DNA of 64,000 nucleotides from Selaginella moellendorffii (lineage: Eukaryota > Plantae > Lycopodiophyta). Location: positions 2,916,041 through 2,980,040 of the forward strand of contig NW_003314263.1 of NCBI RefSeq assembly GCF_000143415.4, given 5' to 3'. This document shows, piece after piece, positions 1 to 38,140 of the stretch (its first letter is position 1; every line of letters starts with the position of its first letter). Position numbers and translations under genes: made by a program. The notes beneath the pieces were generated by a model. It made no database searches, was not told the origin of the DNA, and saw only the letters and a list, made by a program, of their open reading frames with translations.

Positions 1-1261
1 GGCGACTCATGGGAAATTTTTCCCTCGGGATGCAAAAGGTGTGAGGGCTTTGATCGTCCGAGGATAACGACGAAGCCATGGAAGTGAGGGCAGAAAGGGT
101 ATGTTATGCGGCTGCTATGGCATTTTTGTTTCCACTTTTTAATTTTTTTTCTCTTTTAGGTGTCTGAGGATGGCCAAGTGCTAGAAGCTGTAAGACATTT
201 CTGGTCACCAGCAAACATTGTGTGTCTGGCAAGAACACGACAGAGCTGAAGCGATGATCGATGATTCCATCAAGAGAGGCGAGATTCTTTTGTGCTAAAA
301 TGCTATTACTCTCTAGAAAACGTCTAAAACATATTCTCCTTCTACCATATTGGTAAGAGAAGTTCTTCGAAAATTCCAGCAGCAGCAACTCAAAGTGGGA
401 TTTAACATTTGAATATGGATAATATCACCGCAGTGTGGATCATTGTCTCTGCGGGGGCATCTTCTTCCATTGCCTTCTAATCCTCTTGCCGCGCCCTAAA
501 CTTTGAATCAGTGCCTTGGCGGCACACTGACGTGGCAGCAATGAATGCATCCTCTTCAGAAATCGAGCATATCCCCTTCCCTTCCCGCCTAAATTCGCCC
601 TAGTCGTGCCCAAGTATCTTTGGTATATTCTCCGCATCTTTAACTTCACGGCCAGCAGAACACCGAGGGAGAAGAAGATCTCTGCCTAGGGTTTTACAGA
701 TCGATCGATAGATTTCTAGGCGCTTGGCAGCATTGAGAAATCATCCACAAGGTACATTCTTTCTTCCCTTGCTTGGTCGCCATCGCCATAGTTCACCGGG
801 ATTGTCTAGATCTGCGGCAGAATCCAGCGTGGGATTGATCGCTCAGGCTCTCTAGGCCGGGATTTCTTGGACTGGATGCCGGATTATCACGGATTCACCT
901 CTTTTGCAATAGCATCGATGCATGAGCGCGTGGAAGCGACTGTTCCAGCGGTGCTGTTGGCGTGATCGTCGTATTGGAGAGCGTGGTTCTCATCCACCAG
1001 CTGAGAATCCGGGCAGGCAGGGTAGATCGAGCTCCCACGGCTCCAGAAAATTGGTAAGCTATCTTCTAACTTATAGATCGACGTGCATAACTCATGAAGC
1101 TCCTCTTGCAGGAAGGACGAGCTTCCACTATCTCGCCGCCAAATCCACAGCCAACTGTGACTAGTTCTAGCAGAGGAAAGCATTGGTACGTTCTTCTTTT
1201 AAACTGGGAACTGACAAGTTTCTATCCAGTTCTTAGTTCCAGACGCTAGACTTCGAATGCA

Positions 1262-4200
1262 ATGAAAGAGAGAAGAGAGAATCTGGACATTCTCAAGCCC
1301 GAGATCATTGACATGGTTGTCAAGAAGATGAAGCATAACACATATCTCTCGCTCGAGTTCTTTACGCTGGCCATGAGAATCTCCAGCTTCCGGCACGACG
1401 TGGTGATGGTCATGATCCTTGGAGTCGATGGCAACTATTTCATGGCGATCACAGACATGCCCCGTGGAAACGATCTCTACGTGAAGACGAAGTATGACAG
1501 GAAGCTGCGGCCTTCACCTCGTCCCAGACAGCAAAAAGTCCCCGAAGCAGGCTTGGATAGGTTCAGCATGGTAGCAGTCCAACACCAGCTCGGGAGGAAG
1601 ACTTACACAGCCGACGAGCAGGAAGGCAACTACGTGGATCTGATAATGAGTCACAAGCAGTACAGGCAGGAGCTCCATCTTCACAGAGGGAAGAAGCAGT
1701 GGAACGTCCGTGCAGTCAGGGACAAGTTTCTGGTCTACGAGACACTTCCTCCCGCGAGTGACACTGGTGATGATCCTCTGGTGCTTTGCGGTCGCGACAA
1801 GATCGCCATTGTTCAGCCATTGTCAGTAACAGTGAACAACCAGGCGAAGAATGTCTCGTGGAACTCGTTGGGCTTGCAGGAATGCAAAGAAGAAAGGGAG
1901 AACTATATGGTGCCGAGCAGTAAGGAGGGTCAGCCGGGTTTAGTTCCAGGCAAAGGAGCTCTAGTCTTCCACAAGACTGTGAAGAAAGGAGGAGGGAGCT
2001 GGAGCTCCAAGACGGTTGCGAAGCTGGATAACAGGCTCAAGACTGGGATAACGCACCCCTACCAGCTCTGCGTGGTTCTCAAGAAGCTCAACGATGCCTC
2101 TCTCTCCCTCAAAATCTTTACGTGGGCCAAGACAATGCAGCACGACCTGGTGATGATCATGATCCTGCACAACTATCTCATGGTGATCACAAAACTGCCC
2201 CGTGACGACGATCTCTACGTGAAGACGAAGCATGGTAGGAAGCTCGGGCCACCACCTTGTCCGAGACTAAGTCGAGAGCAGGAATTCGCAGACCACCAAG
2301 CAGGCTTCAGTGTGGCAGCACTCCACCACCAGCTCGGGAAGAAGACCTACACAGCCGAAGAGCAGGAAAGCAACTGCGTGGATCCAATCCTGAGTCACAA
2401 GGAATACGGGCGGAAGCTCCACCTTCATAGTGGGAAGGAGCAGTGGAACATCCATGCAGTCGAGGACAAGTTTCTGGACTACGAGACAGTGAGCGACACC
2501 GATGATGATCCTCCAGGGGTTTGCAGTCGCACCAAGTTCGTCAGTGGTCAGCCTTTGTCAGTAACAGTGGACAACCGGGCGACGAAGGTCTCCTCGTCAT
2601 GGAACTCGTTTCCAGTGTGGAGCTTGCGAGAAGGAACAGAAGAAACGGGGAACTATATGGTGCTGAGCAGTAAGGTGGTGCTACCAGGTTTACTCCCAGG
2701 CAAAGGAGCTCTAGTCTCCGATGCTTTGTGCGAGATTTTGAAGGAAGGAGGAGGGAGCTGGAGGTCCGAGATAGTTGAGAAGCTGGACAGGCTCAAGCGC
2801 GGGAAAACGCACCCCCACCAGGTCTGCGTTGCTCTCAAGAAGATGAAACACGATGCATCTCTCAAGCTCTTTACGTGGGCCAAGACGATCCCTGGCTCTA
2901 AGCACGACTTGGTAAACTACTGCACGATGATCATGATCTTGGGAGATGACGGCAACTATCTCATGCCGGAGGCACTCTTCATTGATCTCCAGGAGCTCGG
3001 GCTTTGCATTGACACGTTTGCAGTGAACAACATGATCCCCTGCTACACAAGAGTGAACCGGATCCAGGAAGCTGTCGACCTCTACAGAAAGATACCATAC
3101 TTTTCAGACAATTGCATCCCCGGCCTCCTCGTCGACTGGTGCAGCACTGGTCTCCAGGGAAACAATAAGGTGGCAGTTCCAGACAGCGGCACGCTAGTCT
3201 TGAATGCTTTCTATGAGGCAATGGAAGAGGGAGGAGGGAGCTGGGACTTTGAGACGGCTGAAAATCTAGACAGACTTAAGCGTGGGATCAACATGATTCT
3301 CAAGAAGATCCAGCACGATGCATCTCTTGCGCTCGAGCTCTTTATCCTGGCCAAGACGATCCCTGGTTTCCAGCATGACCTGGCCAACTACTCAACGATG
3401 ATCATGATCCTGGGAAACGCTGGTAACTATCTCACGGCCAAGGCACTCTTCACTGAGATTCAGGAGCTCGGGCTTTGCATCGACATGGTTGCAGCCAACA
3501 ACATAATCCGCTGCTACACAAGCGTGATCCAGGATGCTCTTGACCTCCAAATTGGGAAACTCTGTGGTACCATCGGGATTGCGGTTGCTGGCAAGCATGG
3601 GAGCTTCGTGGTATTTTTCGACAGTCTCGTAACGGAGATTTCATCAGATCAAATTGGCCAACTATATCTAGAAGAGAAGGACAGGGAATACCGGAAGGTG
3701 ACTGTGATTCGTGACGAGCCACAACTACAAATCGGCATTGCTGGGTCCGTAAGTGACGCTCGCTGCATCATAATGGTACTGAAGATTGAGATGTCAAGTC
3801 AGGCTCAGCATGGAGTCACCATGACTTGTGAGGCAGCTGCAAATTTCGTCTTCCAGCGCTGCGTGGCTGATGAGCACTGTACGAGATCAAGCTTTTTCAT
3901 TTTTGACAACAAGAAACTCTTCGCTGTTAAGAGAGACAACACGCGCCAGTACCAGCTCTTGCAATTGGACGCAGTGGAACAGCCGTTTTTGACTATCGGT
4001 TCTGGTGGCCCGCATGCCGAAGGTATTCTGCGAGATCCACGGCCAGGTGTGGTTGGATTTTGTTTCCTTGAGATTGGATTAAGCTGCTTTTGAATTCTGC
4101 AGGGCAAGCTCACGGGAAGAAAGCCACTCTGGGCCAAATCACTAATCTTGGGCTCGATGCCCTCGCAGAAGCATGCGACAATGATCCACATTGCGGCGGA

Positions 4201-4335
4201 GACAAATATTATGCGTATTCAAATGTTAAATCCCACTTTGATGAGCTGCTGCTGAAATTTTCGAAGAAGAACTTCTCTTACCAATATGCGAGAAGAAAGA
4301 GACCAAGAGGTAAACTAAACATGGCTTTGTTTTAG
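1262..4335 (+). CDS. Chimeric protein (~1005 aa spliced): tandem partial copies of the PPR-SMR N-terminal region fused to a proteasome-beta/HslV-like Ntn-hydrolase domain; exons 1262-4046, 4103-4335
   Basis: The 943-aa ORF repeats DLYVKTK..RKL and LKLFTWAKTIPG..HDL.NY.TMIMILG blocks that also occur in the 45046-47418 PPR protein. The C-terminus reads LCG|TIGIAVAGKHGSFVVFFDS..EYRKV..IGIAGSVSDA..TIGSGGPHAEGIL. An in-frame GT-AG intron at 4047-4102 adds ATLGQITNLGLDALAEACDNDPHCGG. Confidence 0.7.
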
Positions 4336-4360
4336 ACATTTTCTAAGGAGTAATAGCATT

Positions 4361-4831
4361 TTAGCACAAAAGAATGTGGCCTCTCTTAATGGCATCGTCG
4401 ATCATCGCCTCAGCTCTGTCGTAGTGTTCTTGCCAGACACACAATGTTTGCCAATCAACATCCGGTGACCAGAAATTTCTTACAGCTTCTAGCACTTGGC
4501 CATCCTCAGACACCTAAAAGAGAAAAAAATTAAAAAGTGGAAAACAAAAGCCATAGCATACCCTTTCCGCCCTCACGTCCATGGCTTCGTCGTTATCCTC
4601 GTCAACAATAAAGACGATCAAAGCCCTCACACCTTTTGCATCCCGAGGGAAAAATTTCCCATGAGTCGCCACACTACCTTCATATGGCACTGGCAAATCC
4701 TTTGCTGTGTAGCTCAAGAGGTAGTACTCTCGCCCACTTAGTTCATCAATCATGGCCACCTTCCCAAGTATAAAATCGCCCTTATAATTCTTGGCCATGG
4801 CTTCCATCATCTGCCTGGCAATCGCCTCCAT
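4361..4831 (-). CDS. Orphan ~140-aa two-exon gene (exons 4831-4562, 4513-4361), convergent with the Ntn-domain gene
   Basis: ORF MEAIARQMMEAM...DVRAER, then a 48-nt GT..AG intron, then VSEDGQVLEAVRNFWSPDVDWQTLCVWQEHYDRAEAMIDDAIKRGHILLC*. An upstream exon is possible (tttag acceptor just before the ATG). Confidence 0.5.
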
Positions 4832-5439
4832 CGCGACCTCGACCTAAAACAATGCCTGGACAGCAATCCTTTATTTGGAGGGCTGCATCCAAAAGTGACT
4901 TACTCCCGGAATATTCTACAGCAGTCCTTTATTTGGAGGGTACTTTGAGCTGAGATGCTGCATCTTCATTAAAATAAAATCATCAAAACAGCTTATTATA
5001 ATCCGTTGGTCTCATGTTTTCTTGGTGGGTGTTGCAAGACCAACAGTTAATGAATGAATGAAAACAGTGCTGGCTATGTTTCAGAATTTGTCCAACATTG
5101 AATCCGGTTTTCAAGAAGCTCAAATAAGCCACCAACTCACACTTTCGGTGTCTTTGCCTACGTTCCAGCGCCTGGATACAAGGGCATAGGAGTGGACTTT
5201 AACTCCGCCCGAGTTTAAGGTACACACTCTCCGCTTGTTTGCCAAAAGAAGTGTCAATGCATAGTATTGCTTAAGTCCCATCAGAGACCAGGCCAAGAAG
5301 CAAAGCGAATCACCGTGTATTATAGCGTTGTGAGCATTGCAAGGCTCCCCGGCAGCATCTAACAAGGATTTAGCCATGCCATTTCTGTAACCTGAGAATT
5401 AAACGTCATTACAGACTTTCGGGACAATTGCGTCTCCAG

Positions 5440-5630
5440 CCTCCCATCGACTGGTGAAACGCTAGTCTTTAGGAAACAGTAAGGTGGCAGTTCCAGCAGA
5501 GGCACGCCAGTCTTAAACGCTTTTCTAAGGCGATGGAATGGGACTCCGAGACGGCTGAAGTCTGGACAGACTTAAGTGTTGGATCAACATGGTTCTCAAG
5601 AGACTCGAGCACAATGCATCTCTTGGGCTA
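5440..5630 (+). pseudogene. Degenerate PPR-SMR-derived fragment
   Basis: Similar to 3120-3330 (atcgactggtg..aaggtggcagttccag..gacagacttaag..gatcaacatg), with stops. Confidence 0.65.
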
Positions 5631-5914
5631 GTGAAGGTTTCAACTCCGTTCCCCGAGTCCAAGGTACACACTCTAAGATCTCGTTGTCTTTTCATAGCAG
5701 TTTGCAGACGAATTTCTATCCGGGACTGCAAGTTCATCGCCCTGCTTACAAGCATACAGCAAGGGAAAGCGGTGGAATCCAAGTATCTCATGTATGTCAA
5801 AGTAAGTCGCTCGAAAAGCTTATAAGAAGAGCGTAAGACTTTTTATGCATAGGTGAAAGTGTTCCCGGTGGAAGACGGTTCCAAGTAGGATACATCGATG
5901 TTGATGGTGGGGTT

Positions 5915-6460
5915 GTGACGAGGATTTGATAGCTGAGAGCAGTGGTACGATGCAAATGTCTCAATTCCAGGCTGCGATAAAGAAATCTTTTTTCGCTTTC
6001 ATTTATTTTTCGTGCTGCTGTGGGGATACATACGATCAGTGCAGCTTTCCAGGTCTTTCTGGTTCTGTTCTATTCGCGTAGCACGCTGCGATTTTTTTAT
6101 AATGTACCTCTTACGAGCAGCGGAGCATTCATTCCAGGTGCTAAGCTTGTGGCGGAATGTACACGAGTGAAGCCTTGCACGTCCCTTCCTTACAGGTCTC
6201 TGTCTAGTTTGGATAGAAACCTCTTTCCTTCTTTTGTTAAGTGTAGTTCTTCCATTCCATCTGAAGACCCTCTGAAGTTACATGACTACCGGCTGCTTGG
6301 AAAACCTTGATGAAGCTTATGAGCACGAAAGAGTCGCTTCACAATGCCATGGTCCTCGTAATGAGGATCGACAAAGACATCGCAATTTCGAGGTTGTGGA
6401 AACTTTATTTTTCTGGTTACTGAATTCGTTAGCGATGTGCTGGCCACAAAGTTTCCTCGC
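5915..6460 (+). pseudogene. Captured, decayed DHAD (ilvD) gene fragment with intron remnants
   Basis: cagtggtacgatgcaaatgtctcaattccaggctgcgataa and ttccattccatctgaagaccctctgaag..cacgaaagagtcgcttcacaatgccatggtc match the reverse complement of DHAD exons at ~62450-62540 and ~61710-61860. Confidence 0.85.
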
Positions 6461-8250: not shown

Positions 8251-8346
8251 TTATGTTCAGAAAGTCCACTTAGAACAACGTGGCGGAGAAAAAAACCACG
8301 CACTGCAAAATAAAGGTTGGACAATTTTTGCTTTCATAGGCTACCG

Positions 8347-9862
8347 ATGTATATCCTCTTTGTGGCGTTAATTCTCTTCTTGGTTCTCTCATGGAGTTAC
8401 AAATCTCACAAAAACGTCCCCCCAGGCCCATGGGGACTGCCTCTGATCGGCCATCTTCATTTATTGGCAGGAACACTCCCACATAAGGGATTACAATATA
8501 TCTCCAAAAAGTATGGCCCCGTTGTATTCTTGAGGCTGGGAATGATGCCCACCGTGGTTATCTCTAGCCAGGAGCTTGTCAAGGAAGTCTTTACAACACA
8601 CGACGTGAATTTTGGTTCCAGGCCATACATGGTTTTAGGCGAGCATTTCAGCTACAACTATTCGGGACTTGGGACTTGTCCATATGGGAAGCACTGGAGA
8701 GACTCTCGCAAGCTGTGTACTATAGAGCTTTTCACAGCCAAGTGCATAGATTCCTTCGCGTGGATGAGAAAGGAGGAGCTCTCTCATGCCTTGCGAGTGA
8801 TTCTCGGCGGCAGCAAGCCAGTGAAGATGAGGGCGTTACTATCCAATTTTGCTTTCAACAATATGTCCAGGATTTTGATGAGCAAGAGGTATTTTGGTGA
8901 CGACGAAGTAGACAGAGATGCTGTAGAGTTTAAGGAGATGCTGAGCTCTGTTGTTGACCTGGTGATGAATCCCTGTGTTAGCAACTTGGTGCCTTGGTAC
9001 TTGAGATGGCTAGACTGGCAGATCCCTCGCTACAAGCGAATCCATGCCAAGCAAGACAACTTCTTACAAAAGATAATTGACGAGCACAAGGAGACAACAC
9101 GGGAATGCAAGGACTTCCTTGATATCATGCTCGAGTTCTACGGAACAAATGTCCAGGGGGAAACACACATAAAGGCAAATCTTTTGGTAAGAGTTCTTCT
9201 ATACTTTGTGATTGCCATAAATTTCATTCCAGGAGATGCTTGTCGCTGGAACCGATACTTCTGCCACCACAAGCGAGTGGCTCATGGCCTCGGTGATGCA
9301 CAATCCTCGGGTTTTGATCAAGCTCCAGCAGGAGCTTGACAGAGTCGTAGGCGGCAACCGGATGGTCCAAGAATCCGACCTCCCAAAGCTCGACTATCTC
9401 CAGCTTGTCCTCAAGGAGACATTTAGGTGCTATCCTCCAGGAGTGCTACTTTTCCCACGCATGTCTACCCAGGACGTCACAGTTGCCGGCTATCACGTTC
9501 CAAAAGGGACCACTCTCCTGGTGAATGCTTGGGCCGTGCACATGGACCCGGAAGTGTGGGAGAATCCCACACAATTCCAGCCGGAGCGCTTCTTGGGGAG
9601 CTCCATCGATGTCAAAGGCCAAAACTTTGAGCTGCTCCCATTTGGAGCCGGGCGGAGAAAGTGTCCGGGAATGTCCCTGGGATTGCGAACAGTGGAGCTG
9701 CTCGTGGCAAATCTAATTCACGGCTTTGACTGGAACTTTGTACCGGGGACGACACCGTCCATGGAAGAGGTTTTCAATAGTGCTTGCTACCTCAAGACTC
9801 CACTGCAAGCCATGGCCACTCCAAGGTTACGTATGGACATCTACAAGAACATGATCATGTAA
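8347..9862 (+). CDS. Cytochrome P450, CYP71 clan (A-type), ~489 aa; exons 8347-9186, 9233-9862
   Basis: Membrane anchor followed by PPGPWGLPLIGHLHLL; I-helix AGTDTS, K-helix KETFR, PERF, heme loop PFGAGRRKCPG; single 46-nt GT-AG intron at the conserved pre-I-helix position. Confidence 0.95.
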
Positions 9863-10472: not shown

Positions 10473-11379
10473 AAAATATATGTTGGAGTGAATAATGTAT
10501 TTGTTTACTTCAAGTTAAAATAAAAAATTAAAAAGATGTGGAAAAATATAATACCACATAACTTACTATGTATTATATGTTTCTATAAATTTAAATGATA
10601 CCTCACTAAAGTTTAAAAGTTTTATTTCTAATTTAAAATTATAAAATACTTTCTTGTTTTAATCACTTATATGCCTCTCTTGTTGGAATCGTCAATCATC
10701 GCTTCAACTCTGTCGCGGTGTTCTTACCAGACACACCATGTTTGCCAATCAACATCCGGTGACCAGAAATTTCTTAAAGCTTCTAGCACTTGGCCATCTG
10801 AAGGAGAAAGAAGGAGAAAAAAATTAAAAGTGACAAAAAAAACTTTCTCAGTCCTCGTTATCCTGTCTAAAACAAAACCATATTTAGTCTACCTCTTGGT
10901 CTCTTTGAATATTTCAGCAGCAGCACATCAAAGTGGGATTCTGATTTTGTCGCATGCTTCTGCGAGGTCCAAGATTAGTGATTTGGCCCAGAGTGGCTTC
11001 TTCCCGTGAGCTTGCCCTGCAGAATTCAAAAGCAGCTTAATCCAATCAGTGAAAGTGAAACCTTTTTCGTGACCTTAATGCGATGTCCTGGGAGTAGTGG
11101 CAAAACATTGCGCTTGTACTACCTGAACAAAAAATTCCAGGAAAAGAGCACAGCTCGTTCTAGGAGAAGATCTACTCATATGATCGAGTTCATAAGCCAC
11201 AAATTCCTCTTGCGCTGATTGTCCCTCGGAATCCAAGAAAGACGGATCTCGAGCTCCAGCGCCATCGAGCAATACGTGTCCATTCCCGCCTATTCACAAG
11301 TATCTCTGGTATATTCTTCGCATCTCTTCACGTCGCATGTAAGATCTCTCTCGAGGCGTTGTCTTTCTTCCCCCCTAGG

Positions 11380-12510
11380 TCTCCATCGCCACAGCTGGCA
11401 TGATCGTCCGTGGCAGAATCCATCGCGAAGGAGAAATATTTGGATCGCCAGGGCCGGGATTTTCTTGGATCGGCTGCTGGATTATTACGGCTTCACCTCT
11501 CTTGCGATAGTGTCGATGCGTGAGCGCGTCAAGTGGATTTTCCAGCGCTGCTGTTGGCGTGATCTTCGTACTGGTGAACTTGGTTCTCATCTATCAGCTG
11601 AGAATCCGGATCGAGCTCCGGCAGCTCCAGCAAATTGGTAAGATGCCTTCTAACTTACGTATGAAGCAGGAACAAGCCGAGCTTCCACTATCTCGCCCCC
11701 GAATTCACAGCCACTGCAAATAGTTCTAGCGGTAGGAAGCCCTCAAATCAATCCACTACTGGTAAGCTAAAAAATTTCTTCTTACAATAAAATGATGACA
11801 AGTTTCTATTCTTTTTGTCTAGTTCAAGTCTTCGATGCAATGAAAAAGAGGAGCTCGGGCTTTGCATCGACATGGTTGCAGTCAACAACATAATCCGGTG
11901 CTATAGAAGCGTGATCCAGGATGCTCTTGACCTCCAAATTGGGAAACTCTGTGGTACCATCGGGATTCTGGTTGCTGGCAAGCATGGGAGCTTCGTGGAA
12001 TTTTTCGACAGTCTCATAACGAAGATTTTACCAGATCCAATTGGCCAAATATATCTAGAAGAGAAGGACAGGGATTCGTGACGAGCCACAACTATAAATC
12101 GGCATTGCTGGGTCCGTAAGTGATGCTCGCTCCATCATAAGGGTACTGAAGATTGAGATCTCAAGTCAAGCTCCACCATGACTTGTGAGGCAACTGCAAA
12201 TTTCGTCTTCCAGCACTGCACGAGATCACGCTTTTTCATTTTTAATCACAAAAAACTCTCCGCTGTTAGGAGAGACGAGTACTAGCTCTTGCAATTGGAC
12301 GCAGTGGAACAGCCACACTTGACTATCTGTTAAGGTGGCCCGCATGCCGAAGATTTTGTGTGATTGGATTAAGCTGCTTTTGAATTCTGCAGGGCAAGCT
12401 CACGGGAAGAAGCCACTCTGAGCCAAATCACTAATCTTGGACCTCGCAGAAGCATGCGACAAAATCAGAATCCCACTTTGATGAGGTAACTTAATATGGT
12501 TTTGTTTTAG
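11380..12510 (+). pseudogene. Decayed third copy of the PPR/Ntn chimeric gene (5' flank, short PPR piece, frameshifted Ntn domain)
   Basis: ORF 11815..12081 ELGLCIDMVAVNNIIRCY..IGKLCGTIGILVAGKHGSFVEFFDS, followed by deletions and stops; 5' flank matches 780-1270. Confidence 0.85.
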
Positions 12511-12589: not shown

Positions 12590-13150
12590 ATCTATTATAA
12601 GGCGAGCAAACTTTGTGGCCAGCACATGGCTAACGAATTCAGTAACCAGAAAATAAAGTTTCCACTACCTCGAAATTGCGGTGTCTTTGTCGATCCTCAT
12701 TACGAGGACCATGGCATTGTGAAGCGACTCTTTCGTGCTCATAAGTTTCATCAAGGTTTTCCAAGCAGCCGGTAGTCATGTCACTTCAGAGGGGTCTTCA
12801 GATGGAATGGAAGAACTACACTTAACAAAAGAAGGAAAGAAGTTTCTATCCAAAATAGACAGAGACCTATAAGGAAGGGACGTGCAAGGCTTCACTCGTG
12901 TACATTCCGCGACAAGCTTAGCACCTGGACATGAATGCTCAACTGCTCGTAAGAGGTACATTATAAAAAAATCGCAGCGTGCTACGCGAATAGAACAGAA
13001 CCAGAAAGACCTGGAAAGCTGCACTGATCGTATGTATCCCCACAGCAGCACGAAAAATAAATGAAAGCGAAAAAAGATTTCTTTATCGCAGCCTGGAATT
13101 GAGACATTTGCATCGTACCACTGCTCTCAGCTATCAAATCCTCGTCACAA
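12590..13150 (-). pseudogene. DHAD fragment (inverted-arm copy)
   Basis: ctttatcgcagcctggaattgagacatttgcatcgtaccactg matches 62454-62494. Confidence 0.85.
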
Positions 13151-14182
13151 CCCCACCATCGACATCGATGTGTCCTACTACTGGGAACGCTTTCACCTAT
13201 GCATAAAAAGTGTTACGCTCTTCTTGTAAGCTTTTCGAGCGACTTACTTTGACATACGTGAGATACTTGGATTCCACCGCTTTCCCTTGCTGTATGCTTG
13301 TAAGCAGGGTGATGAGCTTGCAGTCCCGGATAGAAATTCGTCTGCAAACTGCTATGAAAAGACAACGAGATCTTAGAGTGTGTACCTTGGACTCGGGGAA
13401 CGGAGTTGAAGCCTTCACTAGCCCAAGAGATGCATTGTGCTCGAGCTTCTTGAGAACCATGTTGATCCAACGCTTAAGTCTGTCCAGATTTCAGCCGTCT
13501 CAGAGTCTCATTCCCTCTGCTGCAACTGCCACCTCACTGTTTCCTAAAGAGTAGCGTTTCACCAGTCGATGGGAGGCTGGAGACGCAATTGCCTGGAAAG
13601 TCTGTAATGACTTTAATTCTCAAGTTACAGAAATGGCATGGCTAAATCCTTGTTAGATGCTGCCGGGGAGCCTTGCAATGCTCACAACGCTATAATACAC
13701 GGTGATTCGCTTTGCTTCTTGGCCTGGTCTCTGATGGGACTTAAGCAATACTATGCATTGACACTTCTTTTGGCAAACAAGCGGAGAGTGTGTACCTTAA
13801 ACTCGGGCGGAGTTAAAGTCCACTCCTATGTCCTTGTATCCAGGCGCTGGAACGTAGGCAAAGACACCGAAAGTGTAGCTCTGGAGTTAGTGGCTTATTT
13901 GAGCTTCTTGAAAACCGGATTCAATGTTGGACAAATTCTGAAACATAGCAGCACTGTTTTCATTCATTCATTCATTAATTGTTTATAGGGTCTTGCAGCG
14001 CCCACCAAGAAAACATGCGACCAACGGATTATAGTAAGCTGTTTTGATGATTTTATTTTAATGAAGATGCAACCCTCCAAATAAAGGACTGCTGTAGAAT
14101 ATTCCGGGAGTAAGTCACTTTTGGATGCAAGCCCTCCAAATAAAGGATTGCTGTCCAGGCATTGTTTTAGGTCGAGGTCGCG

Positions 14183-14653
14183 ATGGAGGCGATTGCCAGG
14201 CAGATGATGGAAGCCATGGTCAAGAATTATAAGGGCGATTTTATAATTGGGAAGGTGGCCATGATTGATGAACTAAGTGGGCGAGAGTACTACCTCTTGA
14301 GCTACACAGCAAAGGATTTGCCAGTGCCATATGAAGGTAGTGTGGCGACTCATGGGAAATTTTTCCCTCGGGATGCAAAAGGTGTGAGGGCTTTGATCGT
14401 CTTTATTGTTGACGAGGATAACGACGAAGCCATGGACGTGAGGGCGGAAAGGGTATGCTATGGCTTTTGTTTTCCACTTTTTAATTTTTTTCTCTTTTAG
14501 GTGTCTGAGGATGGCCAAGTGCTAGAAGCTGTAAGAAATTTCTGGTCACCGGATGTTGATTGGCAAACATTGTGTGTCTGGCAAGAACACTACGACAGAG
14601 CTGAAGCGATGATCGATGATTCCATCAAGAGAGGCGAGATTCTTTTGTGCTAA
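14183..14653 (+). CDS. Orphan ~140-aa two-exon gene, second intact copy (exons 14183-14452, 14501-14653)
   Basis: Same ORF and 48-nt intron (gtatgc..ttttag) as 4361-4831. Confidence 0.5.
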
Positions 14654-14678
14654 AATTCTATTACTCCTTAGAAAATGT

Positions 14679-15943
14679 CTAAAACAAAGCCATGTTTAGT
14701 TTACCTCTCGGTCTCTTTCTTCTCGCATATTGGTAAGAGAAGTTCTTCTTCGCAAATTTCAGCAACAGCTCATCAAAGTGGGATTTAACATTTGAATATG
14801 CATAATATTTGTCTCCGCCGCAATGTGGATCATTGTCGCATGCTTCTGCGAGGGCATCGAGCCCAAGATTAGTGATTTGGCCCAGAGTGGCTTTCTTCCC
14901 GTGAGCTTGCCCTGCAGAATTCAAAAGCAGCTTAATCCAATCTCAAGGAAACAAAATCCAACCACACCTGGCCGTGGATCTCGCAGAATACCTTCGGCAT
15001 GCGGGCCACCAGAACCGATAGTCAAAAACGGCTGTTCCACTGCGTCCAATTGCAAGAGCTGGTACTGGCGCGTGTTGTCTCTCTTAACAGCGAAGAGTTT
15101 CTTGTTGTCAAAAATGAAAAAGCTTGATCTCGTACAGTGCTCATCAGCCACGCAGCGCTGGAAGACGAAATTTGCAGCTGCCTCACAAGTCATGGTGACT
15201 CCATGCTGAGCCTGACTTGACATCTCAATCTTCAGTACCATTATGATGCAGCGAGCATCACTTACGGACCCAGCAATGCCGATTTGTAGTTGTGGCTCGT
15301 CACGAATCACAGTCACTTTCTGGTATTCCCTGTCCTTCTCTTCTAGATATAGTTGGCCAATTTGATCTGATGCAATCTTCGTTACGAGACTGTCGAAAAA
15401 TACCACGAAGCTCCCATGCTTGCCAGCAACCGCAATCCCGATGGTACCACAGAGTTTCCCAATTTGGAGGTCAAGAGCATCCTGGATCACGCTTGTGTAG
15501 CAGCGGATTATGTTGTTGGCTGCAACCATGTCGATGCAAAGCCCGAGCTCCTGAATCTCAGTGAAGAGTGCCTTGGCCATGAGATAGTTACCAGCGTTTC
15601 CCAGGATCATGATCATCGTTGAGTAGTTGGCCAGGTCATGCTGGAAACCAGGGATCGTCTTGGCCAGGATAATGTGTCTGGGACGAGGTGACGGCCGCAG
15701 CTTCCTGTCATACTTCGTCTTCACGTAGAGATCGTTTCCACGGGGCATGTCTGTGATCGCCATGAAATAGTTGCCATCGACTCCAAGGATCATGACCATC
15801 ACCACGTCGTGCCGGAAGCTGGAGATTCTCATGGCCAGCGTAAAGAACTCGAGCGAGAGATATGTGTTATGCTTCATCTTCTTGACAACCATGTCAATGA
15901 TCTCGGGCTTGAGAATGTCCAGATTCTCTCTTCTCTCTTTCAT
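14679..15943 (-). CDS. Shorter PPR-fragment/proteasome-beta-like Ntn chimera (~402 aa spliced; exons 15943-14968, 14911-14679)
   Basis: Copy of 1262-4335 with an in-frame net 1809-bp deletion; the Ntn motifs and the 56-nt intron are intact. Confidence 0.7.
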
Positions 15944-17859
15944 TGCATTCGAAGTCTAGCGTCTGGAACTAAGAACTGGATAGAAACTTGTCAGTTCCCA
16001 GTTTAAAAGAAGAACGTACCAATGCTTTCCTCTGCTAGAACTAGTCACAGTTGGCTGTGGATTTGGCGGCGAGATAGTGGAAGCTCGTCCTTCCTGCAAG
16101 AGGAGCTTCATGAGTTATGCACGTCGATCTATAAGTTAGAAGATAGCTTACCAATTTTCTGGAGCCGTGGGAGCTCGATCTACCCTGCCTGCCCGGATTC
16201 TCAGCTGGTGGATGAGAACCACGCTCTCCAATACGACGATCACGCCAACAGCACCGCTGGAACAGTCGCTTCCACGCGCTCATGCATCGATGCTATTGCA
16301 AAAGAGGTGAAGCCGTGATAATCCGGCATCCAGTCCAAGAAATCCCGGCCTAGAGAGCCTGAGCGATCAATCCCGCACTGGATTCTGCCGCAGATCTAGA
16401 CAATCCCAGTGAGCTATGGCGATTGGCGACCTAGCAAGGGAAGAAAGAATGTACCTTGTGGATGATTTCTCAATGCTGCCGAGCGCCTAGAAATCCATCG
16501 ATCGATCTGTAAAACCCTAGGCAGAGATCTTCTTCTCCTTCGGTGTTCTGCTGGCCGTGAAGTTAAAGATGCGGAGAATATACCAAAGATACTTGGGCAC
16601 GACTAGGGCGAATTTAGGCGGGAAGGGAAGGGGATATGCTCGATTTCTGAAGAGGATGCATTCATTGCTGCCACGTCAGCGTGCCGCCAAGGCACTGATT
16701 CAAAGTTTAGGGCGCTGCAAGAGGATTAGAAGGCAATGGAAGAAGATGCCCCCGCAGAAGCATGTGACAATGATCCACACTGCGGTGGAGCCAGATATTT
16801 ATCCATATTCAAATGTTAAATCCCACTTTGAGTTGCTGCTGCTGAAATTTTCGAAGAACTTCTCTTACCAATATGGTAGAAGGAGACCAAGAGGTAAACT
16901 AAACATGGTTTTGTTTTAGACGTTTTCTAAAGAGTAATAGCGTTTTAGCACAAAAGAATCTCGCCTCTCTTGATGGAATCATCTATCATCGCTTCAGCTC
17001 TATCGTGGTGTTCTTGCCAGACACACAATGTTTGCCAATCAACATCCGGTGACCAGAAATGTCTTACAGCTTCTAGCACTTGGCCATCCTCAGACACCTA
17101 AAGGAGAAAAAAATTAAAAAGTGGAAAAAAAATTTCCATAACATACCCTTTCCGCTCTCACTTCCATGGCTTCGTCGTTATCCTCGTCAACAATAAAGAC
17201 GATCACAGCCCTCACACCTTTTGCATCCCGAGGGAAAAATTTCCCATGAGTCGCCACACTACCTTCATATGGCACTAGATCCTTTGCTGTGTACTAACTT
17301 AGTTCATCAATCATGGCCACCTTCCCAATTATAAAATCACAGCAATCCTTTATTTGGAGGGCTGCATCCAAAAGTGACTTACTTCCGGAATATTCTACAG
17401 CAATCTACTGTGGTTATACTCGAGTTAAAATCCGCTCCTATATCCTCGTATCCTCTGGAACGTCACGCGTTCTACCGCCGAAAGCGTAGCTCTGAGTTGG
17501 CAGCTTATTTTAGCTTCTTGAAAACCACTTACATAAAAATTGAATACTTTCCGGATCAATGTTGTACAAATTCTGAAACACAACCAGAATATAGACATTC
17601 CATGTACCCCGTGTCAGTAGTTTTTGTCCTTGTTGTAACAGCCGTGGTGACATCAACCGCTTGTTTGCCAAAAGAAGTGTCAATGCAGAGTCTGTAGTAT
17701 TGCCTAAGTCCGCTCAGGGACCAGGCCTAGAAGCAAAACGAATCACCATGTATTATAGCGAAAGTTGCGTTGCAAGAATTGCAAGGCTCCCTGGCAGCAT
17801 TTAACAAGGATTTAGCCATGCTATTTCTGTAACGTGAGAATTAAAAGTCGTTACAGAGT

Positions 17860-18445
17860 TTCCAGACAATTGCATCTCTCATCGATTGGTGAAACGCTAG
17901 TCTCTGGTACTCTTCATCGAGATCCAGGAGCTCAGGCTTGGCATCGAGACGCTTGACCGCATCCAGGAAGCTCTCACCTCTACAGGAAGATGCTGTACTT
18001 TGGTTGTCAACCAGATGCTCGCACCTTTTGGCCTCCTCAGCGGCGATAACCAAATCAGTATGCTCTGTGGCATGATTGGGATTGCAGTTGCCGGCAAGCA
18101 TAGCCTACTTACGACACTCCTGCCAGCTTTCAAGACAAAAGAAGGTTCTATCCAAACTAGACAGAGACCTGTATGGAAGGGACGTGCAAGGCTTCACTCA
18201 TGTACACCCCCAACATAAATGAAAAACCTCGCTGCGTTTTACGAAAGAAAAGAACCAGAAGTAGCTGAACACTGATCTACGTATGCCCGTCGACAATTCT
18301 TGGCTACAGCAGCATTTTCAGCTGGCACGAAAAAAAACAACGAAAATGAAAGAGAAAACTTACGTTGAAGTTTATAAAGAGCTTTCTTTATTGCGGCCTG
18401 GAATCGAGACATTTGCATCACACCACTGCTATCAGCTATCAACCT
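17860..18445. pseudogene. Mosaic of decayed PPR, Ntn-domain start (LCGMIGIAVAGKH) and DHAD fragments
   Basis: gagatccaggagctcaggcttggcatcgagac (PPR); tgctctgtggcatgattgggattgcagttgccggcaagcat (Ntn); gcggcctggaatcgagacatttgcatc and gctatcagctatcaa (DHAD). Confidence 0.7.
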
Positions 18446-34527: not shown

Positions 34528-35291
34528 ATGGCAGCTTCATTTTTGTTCCTCACTATCCTAAGCTTTCAGCTACTTCTGATATCTGCAGGTTGATCTCCAA
34601 GTTTTGATTCTTTCTTTCAGGGCTGACTTCTTGAATGCCTTGTCATGATGATTTTGCAGCCGGCAGCCATCGTCTCCAGGTTTGTAGTGATGCTGTTGTC
34701 ACTCTGGACGAATGCTCCAATTGCTGTGCGCTTAAGGCTGGATGCATATATCTAGAGCCTGGAACTGGCAGTCCAGTTTGTCTTGGTGGCACCTCTGCTT
34801 CTCGTCTTTGCCCCTTAATTTGTGAACCACCAAAAATCAAAGTCTGCCCATCCCGAGGGACTAACCAAATTCCAATTTCTGTGCTCCCACCGGATAAGGA
34901 GCCTTCGAATGGCTGTCATCTCTACAATTTAAAGACTGGTGCACCACTGCCAGTAAATGGTGATGACAAGTCCTGCTTGAAGGATGCCGTGGAGATTTGT
35001 GGAGGCACTGTCCATCCTTGGACGCCAGGCAGCTGCGCTACTTGTTGCACCATTCCTCAAGGTTGCTTGGACTTGGGGCATGGCAAATCAATATGCGTCT
35101 CAGGACCTGGTAAAGTCTGCACGCGCGAATGTGGTTTTGTTTCCTATGTCTGCCCAGGTCCAAAAAGTGTTGCGCTCGACTTCAACTCTTGCCACACTTG
35201 CAAGAAGCCACTCAGGGAAGGTTGCAAGCTCTACAACCGTCAGGGGCACCAGCTGTGCGTCAAGGAGGATGATCTACTCCAGCTTGCCTAG
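34528..35291 (+). CDS. Secreted potato type II (Pin-II, MEROPS I20-like) multidomain serine protease inhibitor; exons 34528-34588, 34660-35291
   Basis: Signal peptide MAASFLFLTILSFQLLLISA, phase-1 71-nt intron, repeats CSNCC..KAGC.Y, CPLIC..VCP, CATCC..GC, CTREC..YVCP, GCKLYNRQG..LC. Confidence 0.85.
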
Positions 35292-35721
35292 AAGATGATG
35301 CTGTATTTATATAAAATAAACAGCTCTGGGCATCGTTGTTTAAATAATGGGTACTTGAAATGTATATATATATTATATATATAAAGTTTGACAACGCAAC
35401 TTGTTGTCTTTGTAATCTTGCACTTACAAAGAAGTTCCAAACAAACTTTACCTAGGCATAATGTTTACTTTCCCAATAGTCTATGTTATAGATCTCCGCA
35501 GAACCAAATCATACATCACAATGCATTGGTGTTCAGCTCATCAGCTTCCTCTGAGTTGAAACAACATATGGCTCGCTCTTGCCTTATCACATCCATGTGC
35601 TAATTTAAGAAAATTCCTAAATACCTGAACTTAAAGAAAAAATAAACAAAAGCAAAACGTTAGATCCAACGAATCTTTGTCCTTTTTACCCTTCCATTAC
35701 TGTGCTAATTACATATTAATT

Positions 35722-38000
35722 CTAAGCATCCATAGCAACTTGCTTCTCAGTCTCTAAACAAGTTCATAGAGATAAAAGGCTCAAACGGCGAGTCTAGAGC
35801 CACCAGCGTCCTGTTCACCGCATGGGTCACCTCCTTGCTCTTGTCCGACGCGTAGCCACACACGATGATCACTCGCTCCGGCCTCTCGAATCCCCGCGCG
35901 AGCTTCCGCCTGGACACGATCAATCCACTGGTGAGCGCCACCATCGCAGTCCCGGAGCTCATATCCTGGAGCCAGATAAACCACGCTCCCTGCCAGTCCT
36001 CCCAGATCCCTCTCGGGTAGAGCTCTGTGGAGGAGACACCCTCCCACACGTAGAAGGCCTCGCGAGCGTAGCCAAAGCAGTGGAGATGGTTGACGAGAGC
36101 ATCCGCCAGCCATCGCCCCCAGCGAGGAGGCTTGTCCATCCTCAGCTTGCGAAAAAACTCCCTCGAGTAGCTCTTGAGCTCCTTGATCGCGCGGAGGCCT
36201 TGCAGGATCTCGTTCAGGAACTCGTCCACGCTGGGATGATCATCTCCTCCTCCTCCTCCTGCTGCTGCTGTTGCTGCTGGTTTCGAGGACGACTTCATCA
36301 TCTCTCTCACCGCTCTCGAGTCCGCCACCTTGACGCTGCTCGTGTAGTGACCCAGGAGGATCGTGTACGTTTGCAGCGTCGGCTCCACGCCTCTCTCCGG
36401 CATGACTTTGGTGAGGATGAACTTGGCCGGCTCCACTTCTCGGGCCTTGAGGTAGCCATCGATGAGCGCGTTGCACATCTCGATGCTTGGACCGGCCTTC
36501 GTCTTGCAGGCTTTGTTGAACCATCGCCGGGCTTGCAGCATAGCTCCGGCTCTCGCCCACGAACTTATGAGCGTGCAGTACGTGAATCGATCTGGAGCGA
36601 GGCCGGCCTTTCGTATATCACCCAGGATGTTCTGCGCATGGCCAGGGAAGCCGCTGGAACCGTAACTCAGTATCACGTTGTTGTAGACGATCAAGTTTGG
36701 CTCTAGGCCGGAGCGGAGGTAGTCCGCGTAGAGCTCTGCCGCTGCTTTCGAGTCTCGAGCCTTGGCGTACATGTGGATGAGGATGGCGTACCCAGGCTTT
36801 CATCTGGTTGGCGGCTTCCCTGGCGTTTGTGAAGTCCCGCTGCTTGCAGAAGTTGTGGATCATTGTGTTGAACGTCTGCGCGTCGGCATTGCGGGGGGAG
36901 GCTCTCAAGTCGAGGAAGATCCGTTGGAGCTCCTTCCGGGAGCCGAACTTGCCGCACCAGTCGATGAGGAGGCCGAAGGTGCAATTGTCCGGGTGACAGC
37001 CAAAGTATGGCATCTTCCTGTAGAGGTCGAGAGCTTCCTGGATCCGGTTCACTCTTGTGTAGCAGCGGATCATGTTGTTCACTGCAAACGTGTCAAGGCG
37101 AAGCCCGAGCTCCTGTATCTCAACAAAAAGTGCCTCGGCCATGAGATAGTTCCCGTCATCTCCCAAGATCATGATCATCGTCGAGTAGTTTACCAAGTCG
37201 TGCTTGAAGCCTGGGATCGTCTTGGCCCACGTAAAGAGCTTGAGCGAGAGAGATGCGTCGTGCTTGATCTTCTTGAGAACCACGCAGACCTGGTGGGGGT
37301 GCATTATCCCATGCTTGAGCCTGTCCAGCTTCTCAACCATCTCGGAGCTCCAGCTCACTCCTCCTTCCTTCACAGTCTCGTACAAGGCATCGAAGACTAG
37401 CGCTCCTCTGCCTGGAACTAAACCCGGCAGCGCCACCTTACTGCTCGGCACCATATAGTTCCCCGGCAGAGCGATCGTTCCCTCCTTGCCTTCTTTTGGC
37501 AAGCTCCACACTGGAAACGAGTTCCACGACGAGGAAACATTCGTCGCCCGGTTGTCTAGTGACAGAGGCCGACCAATGACGAACTTGTCGCGACCACAAA
37601 GCACCGGAGGATCATCACCGGTGTCGGTCGCAGGAGGAAGTGTCTCGTAGACCAGAAACTTGTCCCCGACTGCATGGACATTCCATTGCTTCTGTCCCCT
37701 GTGAAGATGGAGCTCGCACCTGTATTGCTTGTGACCCAGAATCGGACCCATGTAGGTGCCTTCCTGCTTCTTCCCGAGCTGGTGTTGGAGTGCTACCCAC
37801 TGCCCACTGATTCTATCCAAGCCTGCTTGAGGGTCTGTGTGAACAAAGCGTTCCTGCTCTCGACTTAGTCGCGGACGAGGCGGCGGCCTCAACTTCCTAC
37901 CATACTACGTCTTCACGTAGAGATCGTCGTCCCGGCACAGGTCTCTGATCGCAGCCTTCGTCCAGTAGAAGCGAGGAAGGGGCTGAAACTTGGCACCCAT
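35722..38000 (-). pseudogene. PPR-SMR pseudogene (duplicate)
   Basis: AAG>TAG nonsense change near 37905, 23-nt frameshifting deletion near 36791, and deletions in the SMR C-terminus relative to 45046-47418. Confidence 0.92.
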
Positions 38001-38140
38001 CTCTGTTGCTAGCTAGCTAAACCCCTCGCCAACAGAAAAACTTACCGAAAGCTCATCTTTTGACTAAAGAATGTTCCTTCTCTGCCAGAAAATACGAAGG
38101 TTCAGAATCCGGACATGCAACAGAAAGTACTTACAAAGAA

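What the first reader, a model, noticed from the sequence alone, without database searches (positions are those of the whole stretch)
3551..4335. Divergent stand-alone proteasome-beta/HslV-like Ntn protease domain hidden at the end of a PPR-fragment ORF
Seen in sequence: after the PPR-derived part the ORF reads LCG|TIGIAVAGKHGSFVVFFDS (Thr codon 3569-3571), then EYRKV, IGIAGSVSDA, TCEAAANFV and TIGSGGPHAEGIL. An in-frame 56-nt GT-AG intron (4047-4102) then adds ATLGQITNLGLDALAEACDNDPHCGG. Established: proteasome beta subunits and HslV use Gly|Thr1 autocleavage, Asp17, Lys33, GSAAD, GSG(Ser129) and RDxxSGG, in this order and with similar spacing. Inference: this ~236-aa domain is a highly diverged, possibly active Thr protease unlike canonical 20S subunits, and the PPR-derived N-terminus could act as a giant propeptide. 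Copies occur at 14679-15445 (intact), 11940-12480 (decayed), ~18060 (Thr>Met) and as tails at ~340-440, ~10930-11050 and ~16760-16919. It is therefore a small family rather than a chance match.
Basis: partly seen in the sequence, partly recalled or inferred. Interest (0 to 1): 0.92.

Follow-up and report, generated by a model that had tools for sequence, protein, structure and literature searches.

The report
Spikemoss-specific proteasome-beta-like protease gene family
The end of this long reading frame does encode a very diverged relative of the proteasome's cutting subunit. It belongs to a small family found so far only in the spikemoss Selaginella moellendorffii; the family keeps the key catalytic residues and always lies next to the same unknown small gene, but the two copies in this window are recent fusions with PPR gene fragments and showed no transcripts of their own.

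Summary
Window 3566-4046 plus 4103-4335, and an inverted twin at 15463-14679, encode a real but very diverged proteasome beta-type Ntn domain. It passes the Pfam PF00227 threshold, and profile searches hit only proteasome/HslV chains. The AlphaFold model aligns to 20S subunits at Z 13-14, with the candidate Thr on Thr1.

The genome is Selaginella moellendorffii. An exhaustive phmmer search found relatives only in this species. There are at least four old loci at 36-41% identity. All keep Gly-1/Thr1, Asp17, Lys33, Gly47 and Ser129, have Asp or Asn at 166, and have Cys at 169. Two paralogs give dN/dS of about 0.2.

Every locus also carries a conserved 140-aa orphan gene next to the domain.

The window copies are young chimeras with fragments of neighbouring PPR genes. 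No read crossed the proposed splice junction, and the two raw-read RNA runs gave no reads on the domain of the intact copies. Protease activity and the "giant propeptide" idea remain untested.

I found no paper on this family. Other first-reader notes from this scan report similar domains on other pieces of this genome; I did not check them.

The parts
1262..3550 (+). N-terminal part of the chimeric ORF, built from repeated fragments of neighbouring PPR genes
   Evidence: It has Pfam PPR hits and internal direct repeats D3/D4. tblastn matches it at 59-76% to PPR genes at 36951-37952, 40742-41563 and 46018-47367 of the window.
3566..3571 (+). Gly769-Thr770 codons, the predicted Gly-1|Thr1 autoprocessing site
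   Evidence: G and T are invariant in all family members. They align to the GT of Archaeoglobus proteasome beta 6he5_1. In the structural alignment, model residue 8 (the Thr) falls on residue 1 of mature 20S beta chains (rows 27 and 42).
3566..4046 (+). Exon 1 of the proteasome-beta-like domain (strands S1-S8, helices H1-H2, start of H3, GSG)
   Evidence: PF00227 E 2e-5. Family HMM score 205 bits.
4047..4102 (+). Putative 56-nt GT..AG intron, specific to this lineage of the family
   Evidence: Removing it restores an ungapped alignment to the paralogs (ILRDPRPGQAHG against VILGQPVRGQNHG). It is identical in all four intact copies. It is absent from the paralog loci, where the coding sequence is continuous. 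It is not a dispersed repeat. No RNA junction was seen.
4103..4335 (+). Exon 2: rest of helix H3, H4, the D166/C169-G-G motif, and the conserved tail NFSYQYARR up to the stop codon
   Evidence: Family HMM score 116 bits. It aligns to RDxxSG of archaeal beta.
14679..15463 (-). Second intact copy (c2) inside the inverted duplication. Its ORF 15943-14921 has lost 603 codons of the PPR part in frame. The intron is at 14912-14967.
   Evidence: Inverted repeats I1-I3 are 98-99% complementary. tblastn identity is 98%. The gene model is EFJ36471.1 = P0001.
11938..12441 (+). Decayed copy (c3) with seven deletions, about 92% nucleotide identity in the aligned parts. It is transcribed in run X22.
   Evidence: DNA alignment. 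The RNA reads at 3446-3579 carry exactly c3's variants at 3495/3511/3517/3519 and its upstream sequence.
293..483 (-). Fragment of the domain tail, one arm of the inverted duplication
   Evidence: tblastn and family HMM.
16745..16916 (+). Fragment of the domain tail, the other arm of the inverted duplication
   Evidence: tblastn, 83% identity.
10870..11003 (-). Fragment of the domain tail
   Evidence: tblastn.
18054..18164 (+). N-terminal fragment with Met in place of Thr1
   Evidence: tblastn and translation.
4361..4831 (-). Conserved neighbour gene of 140 aa (RefSeq LOC112342037), convergent with the domain; the two stop codons are 25 nt apart. Its 48-nt intron is at 4512-4559. A twin lies at 14183-14653(+).
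   Evidence: RNA joints cross 4511/4560. Spliced translation. Homologs lie beside every paralog of the protease-like gene.

Best explanation
Window 3566-4046 plus 4103-4335, and its inverted twin, encode a genuine but very diverged proteasome beta-type Ntn-hydrolase domain (MEROPS T1 / Pfam PF00227).

It is one lineage of a family seen so far only in Selaginella moellendorffii, with at least four old loci:
- this window;
- P0007/P0008;
- P0005/P0018;
- P0006/P0017.

The family is under purifying selection. It keeps Gly-1/Thr1, Asp17, Lys33, Gly47 and Ser129-Gly130, has Asp or Asn at 166, and has Cys instead of Ser at 169. It carries a 5-10 residue insertion before Lys33 and a conserved C-terminal tail. 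In every locus it lies beside a co-duplicated 140-aa orphan gene.

Inferred mechanism for the family: the precursor cuts itself between Gly-1 and Thr1, and the freed Thr1 amine/hydroxyl acts as the nucleophile, with Lys33 and Asp17 as in 20S beta subunits.

In this window's lineage three things happened (shown):
- Fragments of neighbouring PPR genes replaced the native leader.
- A 56-nt intron-like segment entered helix H3.
- The block was recently duplicated in inverted orientation.

The two copies are structurally intact. They are most likely silent or barely expressed young chimeras rather than the working members of the family (inferred).
For: Homology:
- PF00227 above threshold, and in 5 of 5 members with best E 5.6e-8. 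P0016 and P0017 match from profile position 2.
- NCBIfam archaeal beta E 8.8e-8.
- Family profile against PDB: all 35 hits are proteasome or HslV chains. The best is archaeal beta at E 2e-4, and one alignment is full length and starts at GT.
- AlphaFold model pTM 0.70.
- Foldseek: every listed hit is a proteasome or HslV chain, and at least 500 hits have E<=0.001.
- VIA-align Z 13-14.3, with the Thr on residue 1 of mature 20S beta chains.
- ESM Atlas nearest clusters are PF00227, score 0.96.

Family and selection:
- Exhaustive phmmer found only S. moellendorffii relatives.
- The catalytic columns are invariant.
- P0005 against P0017: dN/dS 0.18-0.25 at dS 0.7-0.9.

Splice: homologs align without a gap only if 4047-4102 is removed.

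Chimera and youth:
- The PPR part derives from neighbouring genes.
- The inverted duplication is 98-99% identical.
- The four intact copies in the two haplotypes differ at only 15 of 729 exon sites.

Expression:
- No junction reads, and no full-identity reads on 3580-4383 in two raw-read RNA runs.
- The adjacent 140-aa gene and the decayed copy c3 are both covered.
Against: - No biochemical data exist for any member.
- The AlphaFold model is only moderate (mean pLDDT 64). It is poor around residues 27-48 of the model, the insertion before Lys33.
- Ser169 is Cys and residue 19 is Leu rather than Arg, so the active-site surroundings differ from active 20S subunits.
- The donor GTGTGG at 4047 is weak, and the annotated model uses 4023 instead.
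- Among the four near-identical copies, about 8-10 non-synonymous against 5 synonymous changes cannot be told apart from neutrality. However, c1 against c2 gives omega 0.23-0.34 (binomial P 0.035), and all four copies are open, which leaves room for function.
- Only about 12% of two RNA runs was read, so absence of transcripts is weak evidence. One read pair in run X1 matches the intact copies.
- The family's absence from other plants rests on protein databases only. No other plant genome DNA could be searched.
Confidence: 0.6

Rival explanations
1. The window copies are working genes: the transcript is spliced at 4046/4103, the 769-aa (c1) or 166-aa (c2) PPR-derived region serves as a very large pro-region, and self-cleavage at Gly769|Thr770 releases an active threonine protease.
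For: - All catalytic positions are intact in all four copies, with no indel or stop over 729 nt.
- The c2 deletion of 603 codons stayed in frame.
- c1 against c2 gives omega 0.23-0.34.
- Exon 2 stays open in the spliced frame.
- Several gene models of the paralogs also carry long N-terminal extensions (P0006 290 aa, P0008 97 aa).
Against: - No junction read, and no reads on the domain in two RNA runs in which the neighbouring gene is covered.
- The copies are only 1-2% diverged, so intactness is expected by youth alone.
- The PPR part is a scrambled recent capture.
- Allelic comparisons give omega of 1 or more on tiny counts.
Confidence: 0.2
2. The family is a non-catalytic derivative: a pseudo-protease or scaffold that keeps the fold and an N-terminal processing site but no longer degrades substrates.
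For: - Ser169 is replaced by Cys in all members, and position 166 is Asn in P0005/P0006.
- A 5-10 residue insertion sits in the substrate-binding loop before Lys33 and is modelled poorly.
- No canonical partner was looked for or identified here. Four of the seven eukaryotic beta subunits are inactive, which is a precedent (established knowledge).
Against: Inactive 20S beta subunits have usually lost Thr1 or Lys33 (established knowledge). Here Thr1, Asp17, Lys33, Gly47 and Ser129 are invariant across paralogs whose synonymous sites are saturated. That pattern is expected if catalysis is under selection.
Confidence: 0.2
3. The protease-like gene and its 140-aa neighbour form a dispersed module. 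It is expressed as a C-terminal fusion to whatever gene lies upstream and frees itself by Ntn self-cleavage.
For: - The pair is kept together at four old loci in three different relative orientations.
- In P0005 and P0017 an intron ends inside the Gly-1 codon, so the domain exon starts at the cleavage site.
- Unchecked notes of this scan report the domain behind fumarase, an ATP/ADP transporter, a TOM2A-like protein and a sirtuin-derived region.
Against: - The other loci could not be fetched or checked.
- The duplicated block shared by L002 and L006 looks like ordinary mosaic segmental duplication; the blastn comparison did not suggest element ends, and terminal repeats were not searched for specifically.
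- No relatives were found in viral or prokaryotic collections.
- The window fusion is explained by local PPR fragments.
Confidence: 0.1
4. The motifs are a chance match, or the domain belongs to another Ntn family such as class-II glutamine amidotransferases (UniProt's automatic name for P0008).
For: UniProt's automatic name for D8SJ71. One member gives a weak GATase_7 hit, E 0.028.
Against: The nucleophile is Thr, not Cys. All sequence, profile, structure and language-model searches point to proteasome/HslV.
Confidence: 0.01

Closest known systems
Archaeal 20S proteasome beta subunit (PsmB; e.g. PDB 3h4p_a, 6he5_1; NCBIfam TIGR03634)
   Same: This is the best sequence match. The alignment is full length, starting at Gly-1/Thr1. 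Residue 17 is acidic, and Lys33, AGSVxDA (Gly47), GSG (Ser129) and Asp166-x-x-x-Gly170 are in register. The fold is the same.
   Different: It scores 28-32 bits against an equivalog cut-off of 224. It has Cys at 169, Leu at 19, an insertion before Lys33 and a roughly 40-aa conserved C-terminal tail. No alpha-type partner was looked for.
Eukaryotic active beta subunits (beta1/beta2/beta5; plant PBA, PBB, PBE)
   Same: It is a eukaryotic nuclear gene with a propeptide ending in Gly. From my own knowledge, the Asp17-Ser18 motif FDSLTT resembles DSRTT/DSRAT of the active subunits. Structural Z is 13 to yeast beta1 chains, with Thr on Thr1.
   Different: The PDB profile E-value is only 0.01-0.03 to beta5. 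It cannot be assigned to any of the seven orthogroups. It is multi-copy, apparently species-restricted, and linked to an orphan gene.
HslV / ClpQ (bacterial and organellar)
   Same: Thr1 Ntn protease of the same fold. Two paralogs hit the HslV models at E 4e-6 to 2e-5. This window's copy reads GSGGPHA, which resembles the motif after Ser124 of HslV as I recall it.
   Different: HslV has no propeptide and is about 175 aa. The GSGG resemblance is not shared by the paralogs. No HslU partner was examined. Scores are below those for archaeal beta.
Newer prokaryotic proteasome homologs: Anbu, BPH, connectase and the families in Fuchs, Alva and Lupas 2021 (PMC8665760)
   Same: These are also diverged stand-alone proteasome-like proteins outside the 20S particle, some with insertions in the S2-S4 region.
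   Different: They are prokaryotic. That paper's text contains no word beginning 'plant', 'Selaginella', 'Viridiplantae' or 'lycophyt'. No Anbu or BPH chain reached E<=1 with the family profile. No relative was found in 185,579 prokaryotic genomes by pattern scan plus tblastn.

Membership tests
Proteasome subunit family (Pfam PF00227 / MEROPS T1) | Sequence match to the family HMM above the curated threshold | tested here: met
   24.8 bits against 22.4 for window 3551-4045. All 5 members match, best E 5.6e-8. P0016 scores 29.9 bits and P0017 27.3 bits.
Proteasome subunit family (Pfam PF00227 / MEROPS T1) | Ntn alpha-beta-beta-alpha sandwich fold | tested here: met
   The AlphaFold model has pTM 0.70 and mean pLDDT 64. 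Every Foldseek hit listed is a proteasome or HslV chain, with at least 500 hits at E<=0.001. VIA-align gives Z 13-14.3 over 143-156 residues at about 3 A. The model is only of moderate confidence.
Catalytically active beta-type subunit | N-terminal nucleophile Thr1 directly after Gly-1 of a propeptide | tested here: met
   GT is invariant, aligns to GT of 6he5_1, and falls on residue 1 of mature 20S beta chains in the structural alignment (rows 27 and 42).
Catalytically active beta-type subunit | Asp/Glu17 and Lys33 | tested here: met
   Asp is at position 17 in the paralogs, and at 18 in the window copy because of a one-residue hairpin insertion. The invariant Lys aligns to Lys33 of the archaeal beta subunit, after a 5-10 residue insertion.
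Catalytically active beta-type subunit | Ser129, Asp166 and Ser169 | tested here: not met
   Ser129 (GSG) is invariant. Position 166 is Asp in the window copy and P0007/8 but Asn in P0005/6. Position 169 is Cys in every member.
Catalytically active beta-type subunit | Self-cleavage and peptidase activity | not testable with these tools
   Needs expression, a T1A mutant and activity probes.
20S core particle subunit (one of PBA-PBG) | Orthology to a canonical beta subunit and assembly into heptameric rings with alpha subunits | tested here: not met
   Scores are far below equivalog cut-offs (28-32 against 224 bits). PDB E-values to beta5/beta6 are only 0.01-0.03. Ring assembly itself cannot be tested here.
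HslV | HslV HMM above threshold, no propeptide, about 175 aa, HslU partner | tested here: not met
   Only 2 of 5 members hit the HslV models weakly. A propeptide with Gly-1 is present. The domain plus tail is about 236 aa. The HslU partner was not examined.
Class-II glutamine amidotransferase (UniProt's automatic name for P0008) | N-terminal Cys nucleophile and a GATase HMM match | tested here: not met
   The nucleophile position is Thr. Only one weak GATase_7 hit, E 0.028.

The most novel reading that the evidence does not exclude
The protease-like gene and its co-duplicated 140-aa neighbour form a lycophyte-specific two-gene module. The protease is made as a C-terminal fusion to unrelated upstream proteins (PPR fragments here; fumarase, transporters and others elsewhere, according to unchecked scan notes) and releases itself by Ntn self-cleavage at Gly|Thr. 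This would be a self-liberating way for a dispersed gene to borrow host promoters.
Probability: 0.1. Interest if true: 0.9.

Novelty: new variant of a known kind. Interest (0 to 1): 0.62.

Why it matters
As far as I know, the only proteasome-type Ntn proteases described in eukaryotes are the 20S subunits and organellar HslV. The many stand-alone homologs found recently are prokaryotic (PMC8665760).

This family is plant-encoded and kept by purifying selection. It retains Thr1/Asp17/Lys33 but cannot be assigned to any 20S subunit, and it is linked to a conserved orphan partner gene. That would make it a new eukaryotic branch of the family and a tractable case of how a core protease fold is redeployed.

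The window also shows how gene fusion, a lineage-specific intron and segmental duplication reshape such a gene. It also corrects an annotated splice site.

Tried and rejected
- **Horizontal transfer or viral origin.** Pattern scans with the family alignment found no relative in 185,579 prokaryotic genomes or in IMG/VR.
- **Relatives in other species.** Exhaustive phmmer and two word-based searches returned only S. moellendorffii proteins, plus two spurious repeat proteins.
- **Fold of the 140-aa neighbour.** AlphaFold gave pLDDT 46, so I did not run a fold search on it. Pfam, PDB profile and ESM Atlas gave nothing.
- **PPR ancestry of the P0008 leader.** The 105-aa leader looked PPR-like by eye. 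Neither Pfam nor tblastn against the window's PPR genes supports this, so I dropped the idea of an ancestral PPR fusion.
- **The 56-nt segment as a repeat or transposon footprint.** It occurs only inside copies of this locus.
- **Transposon-like ends of the two-gene block.** blastn between L002 and L006 shows a mosaic segmental duplication and did not suggest element ends; terminal repeats were not searched for specifically.
- **Phylogeny against PBA-PBG, HslV, Anbu and BPH.** Not done. No tool gave me those sequences, and I did not type them from memory.
- **Literature.** No paper names these loci or a Selaginella proteasome-like family.
Full report
**1. What is in the sequence**

The Gly-Thr codons are at 3566-3571.
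- A GT..AG segment lies at 4047-4102. Removing it joins the frame to 4103-4335, giving a 243-aa product from 3551.
- A second in-frame donor exists at 4023. The annotated gene model of the twin copy (P0001 = EFJ36471.1) uses that one.

**2. Is it a proteasome-type domain? Yes.**

- The piece 3551-4045 alone passes the Pfam PF00227 threshold: 24.8 against 22.4 bits, E 2e-5.
- It hits NCBIfam archaeal proteasome beta at E 8.8e-8.
- A profile of five family members hit 35 PDB sequences, all of them proteasome or HslV chains. The best were archaeal beta subunits at E 2e-4.
- One alignment, to 6he5_1, is full length. It starts at GT and puts Lys33, AGSVxDA, GSG and D-x-x-(S/C)-G in register (repeated with nine rows).
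- An AlphaFold model of the twin copy's domain, built on a five-sequence alignment, reached pTM 0.70 and mean pLDDT 64, with a confident core.
- Every Foldseek hit listed against PDB and AlphaFold DB clusters was a proteasome or HslV relative.
- VIA-align gave Z 13-14.3 over about 150 residues at 3 A. Model residue 8, the Thr, fell on residue 1 of mature 20S beta chains (rows 27 and 42).
- ESM Atlas features point the same way, score 0.96 to PF00227 clusters.
- UniProt's automatic name "GATase type-2" for one paralog is not supported. The nucleophile is Thr, and only one weak GATase_7 hit appears.

**3. Organism and family**

- The window is Selaginella moellendorffii.
- Exhaustive phmmer against 1.84 billion representatives found, apart from two spurious repeat proteins, only proteins of this species:
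  - P0001, the twin copy.
  - P0002 and P0003, decayed copies.
  - Four true paralogs at 36-41% identity: P0005, P0006, P0007 and P0008.
- A further search added P0016, P0017 and P0018, which are the other haplotype and JGI models.
- There are therefore at least four old loci: this window, P0007/P0008, P0005/P0018 and P0006/P0017.
- Invariant columns include G-T-I-G, F-D-S-L-T, the Lys33 equivalent, A-G, I-G-S-G and C-G-G.
- Counting from Thr1, the paralogs have Asp at 17 and Thr at 21, without gaps relative to the archaeal subunit. The window copy has one extra hairpin residue.
- Differences from active 20S subunits: Cys at 169 in all members, Asn at 166 in P0005/P0006, Leu at 19, and 5-10 extra residues before Lys33.

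**4. Selection**

- P0005 against P0017 gives dN/dS 0.18-0.25 at dS 0.7-0.9. Deeper pairs are saturated at synonymous sites, with dN about 0.65. The family has therefore been kept by purifying selection.
- The other haplotype (GL377609.1, loci L004/L005) also holds two intact copies, inside ORFs of 920 and 971 aa.
- The four intact copies have no indel and no stop. They differ at 15 of 729 exon sites and 0 of 56 intron sites, with about 8-10 non-synonymous and 5 synonymous changes.
- c1 against c2 gives omega 0.23-0.34 (binomial P 0.035). Over all four copies the ratio cannot be told apart from neutrality, P 0.16.
- At 1-2% divergence, intactness says little.

**5. The intron**

- The paralogs are continuous across this point. 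They align without a gap to the window protein only if 4047-4102 is removed: AEGILRDPRPGQAHG against AQVILGQPVRGQNHG.
- The annotated donor at 4023 would delete eight residues of helix H3.
- The 56 nt occur only in copies of this locus, including the decayed ones, and are not a dispersed repeat.
- So this is a lineage-specific intron-like insertion with precise GT..AG ends, of a length like the 48- and 51-nt introns seen nearby.
- No read shows it spliced.

**6. Expression**

- I laid four runs on 900-4900. No joint at 4046/4103 or 4022/4103 was found.
- In two raw-read RNA runs, about 12% of each read, no read lay on 3714-4249, and only partial reads from c3 and from the neighbour gene touched the flanking bins.
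- The neighbouring 140-aa gene was covered, and its 48-nt intron was confirmed.
- Reads on 3446-3579 carry C>T, C>G, C>T and C>G at 3495/3511/3517/3519, and an upstream loose end that matches the decayed copy c3 exactly. So c3 is transcribed, not c1 or c2.
- Reads on the PPR part carry fixed differences and come from paralogous PPR genes.
- One read pair in run X1 (two 151-nt contigs at 3700-4009, 0-1 mismatch, no gaps) fits the intact copies.
- The 919-nt unspliced contig of X17 carries exactly the variants of the other haplotype's copy A and is probably genomic.

**7. How the window locus arose**

- The N-terminal 763 residues of the ORF are made of repeated pieces. They are 59-76% identical to PPR genes at about 37, 41 and 46-47 kb of the same window. 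This agrees with another note of this scan on the same ORF.
- Similarity to the PPR pieces ends a few residues before Gly-1.
- Two gene models of the paralogs have short leaders instead: P0005 with 17 aa and P0007 with 18 aa.
- In P0005 and P0017 an intron ends inside the Gly-1 codon.
- The block 448-6132 is repeated in inverted orientation at 12931-16758 at 98-99% identity.
- Copy c2 has lost 603 codons of the PPR part in frame. The deletion is absent from both copies in the other haplotype.
- A decayed copy and five fragments lie around these blocks.

**8. A conserved neighbour**

- The 140-aa gene at 4831-4361(-) converges on the protease-like ORF, with the stop codons 25 nt apart.
- Homologs at 31-44% identity lie next to every paralog:
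  - downstream in the same direction in L001/L003;
  - upstream and divergent in L002/L007 and in L006.
- They share one intron position, are intact, and give omega 0.2-0.5 where synonymous sites are not saturated.
- Their divergence pattern parallels that of the protease-like gene.
- The protein has no match in Pfam, PDB or the ESM Atlas, and its AlphaFold model is unreliable.
- The pair was duplicated and retained together. That suggests functional coupling, but this is an inference.

**9. Comparison with known families, and novelty**

- The domain is a member of the PF00227 / T1 superfamily.
- It is not one of the canonical 20S subunits, HslV, Anbu or BPH.
- No prokaryotic or viral relative was found.
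- The 2021 census of new proteasome homologs (PMC8665760) contains no word beginning "plant", "Selaginella", "Viridiplantae" or "lycophyt". No paper cites these loci.
- Other first-reader notes of this scan report proteasome-beta-like domains behind fumarase, an ATP/ADP transporter, a TOM2A-like protein and a sirtuin-derived region elsewhere in this genome. I could not fetch or test those loci, and I treat them only as leads.

**10. Verdict**

- It is unproven on activity, and unsupported on the giant propeptide and on the HslV affinity.
- The window copies are most likely young, weakly expressed or silent chimeras of a real family that is kept by selection and is lineage-restricted on present data.

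Noticed in passing
window 4361-4831 (-), twin at 14183-14653 (+); L001 10995-11515; L002 8802-9331 (-); L006 4974-5434 (-): An orphan 140-aa gene (RefSeq LOC112342037) lies beside the proteasome-like gene at all four old loci, in three different relative orientations. The copies share one intron position and give omega 0.2-0.5. There is no match in Pfam, PDB or the ESM Atlas, and the AlphaFold model is poor (pLDDT 46).
   Followed up: partly
window 11827-12441: The decayed copy c3 has seven deletions and corresponds to gene model EFJ36078. It is the copy actually transcribed in RNA run X22: the reads carry its diagnostic variants and its upstream sequence.
   Followed up: partly
window 14921-15943 (-), model EFJ36471.1: The annotated model splices at the donor equivalent to 4023, which removes eight residues of helix H3. 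Alignment with the paralogs favours the donor equivalent to 4047.
   Followed up: yes
window 448-6132 and 12931-16758: A large inverted segmental duplication (98-99% identical) flanks a cytochrome P450 gene (ORFs 8317-9339 and 9236-9862). One arm has an in-frame 603-codon deletion that is absent from the other haplotype.
   Followed up: partly
L002 11127-11177; L006 just before 8583: In P0005, and apparently in P0017, a short intron ends inside the Gly-1 codon, so the domain exon begins exactly at the predicted self-cleavage site.
   Followed up: partly
L007 354-1012 (-): A further proteasome-like copy, 75-89% identical to P0006, is split over three frames. It is a pseudogene about 6 kb upstream of P0018.
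   Followed up: no
window 4250-4383: Transcripts of the 140-aa gene run past its stop codon into the last exon of the proteasome-like ORF on the opposite strand. If both genes are expressed, their 3' ends overlap in antisense.
   Followed up: no
window 34528-44616; L005 17907-18670: Pin-II protease inhibitor genes (PF02428) lie in the same region in both haplotypes, interleaved with the PPR genes that donated the fragments.
   Followed up: no
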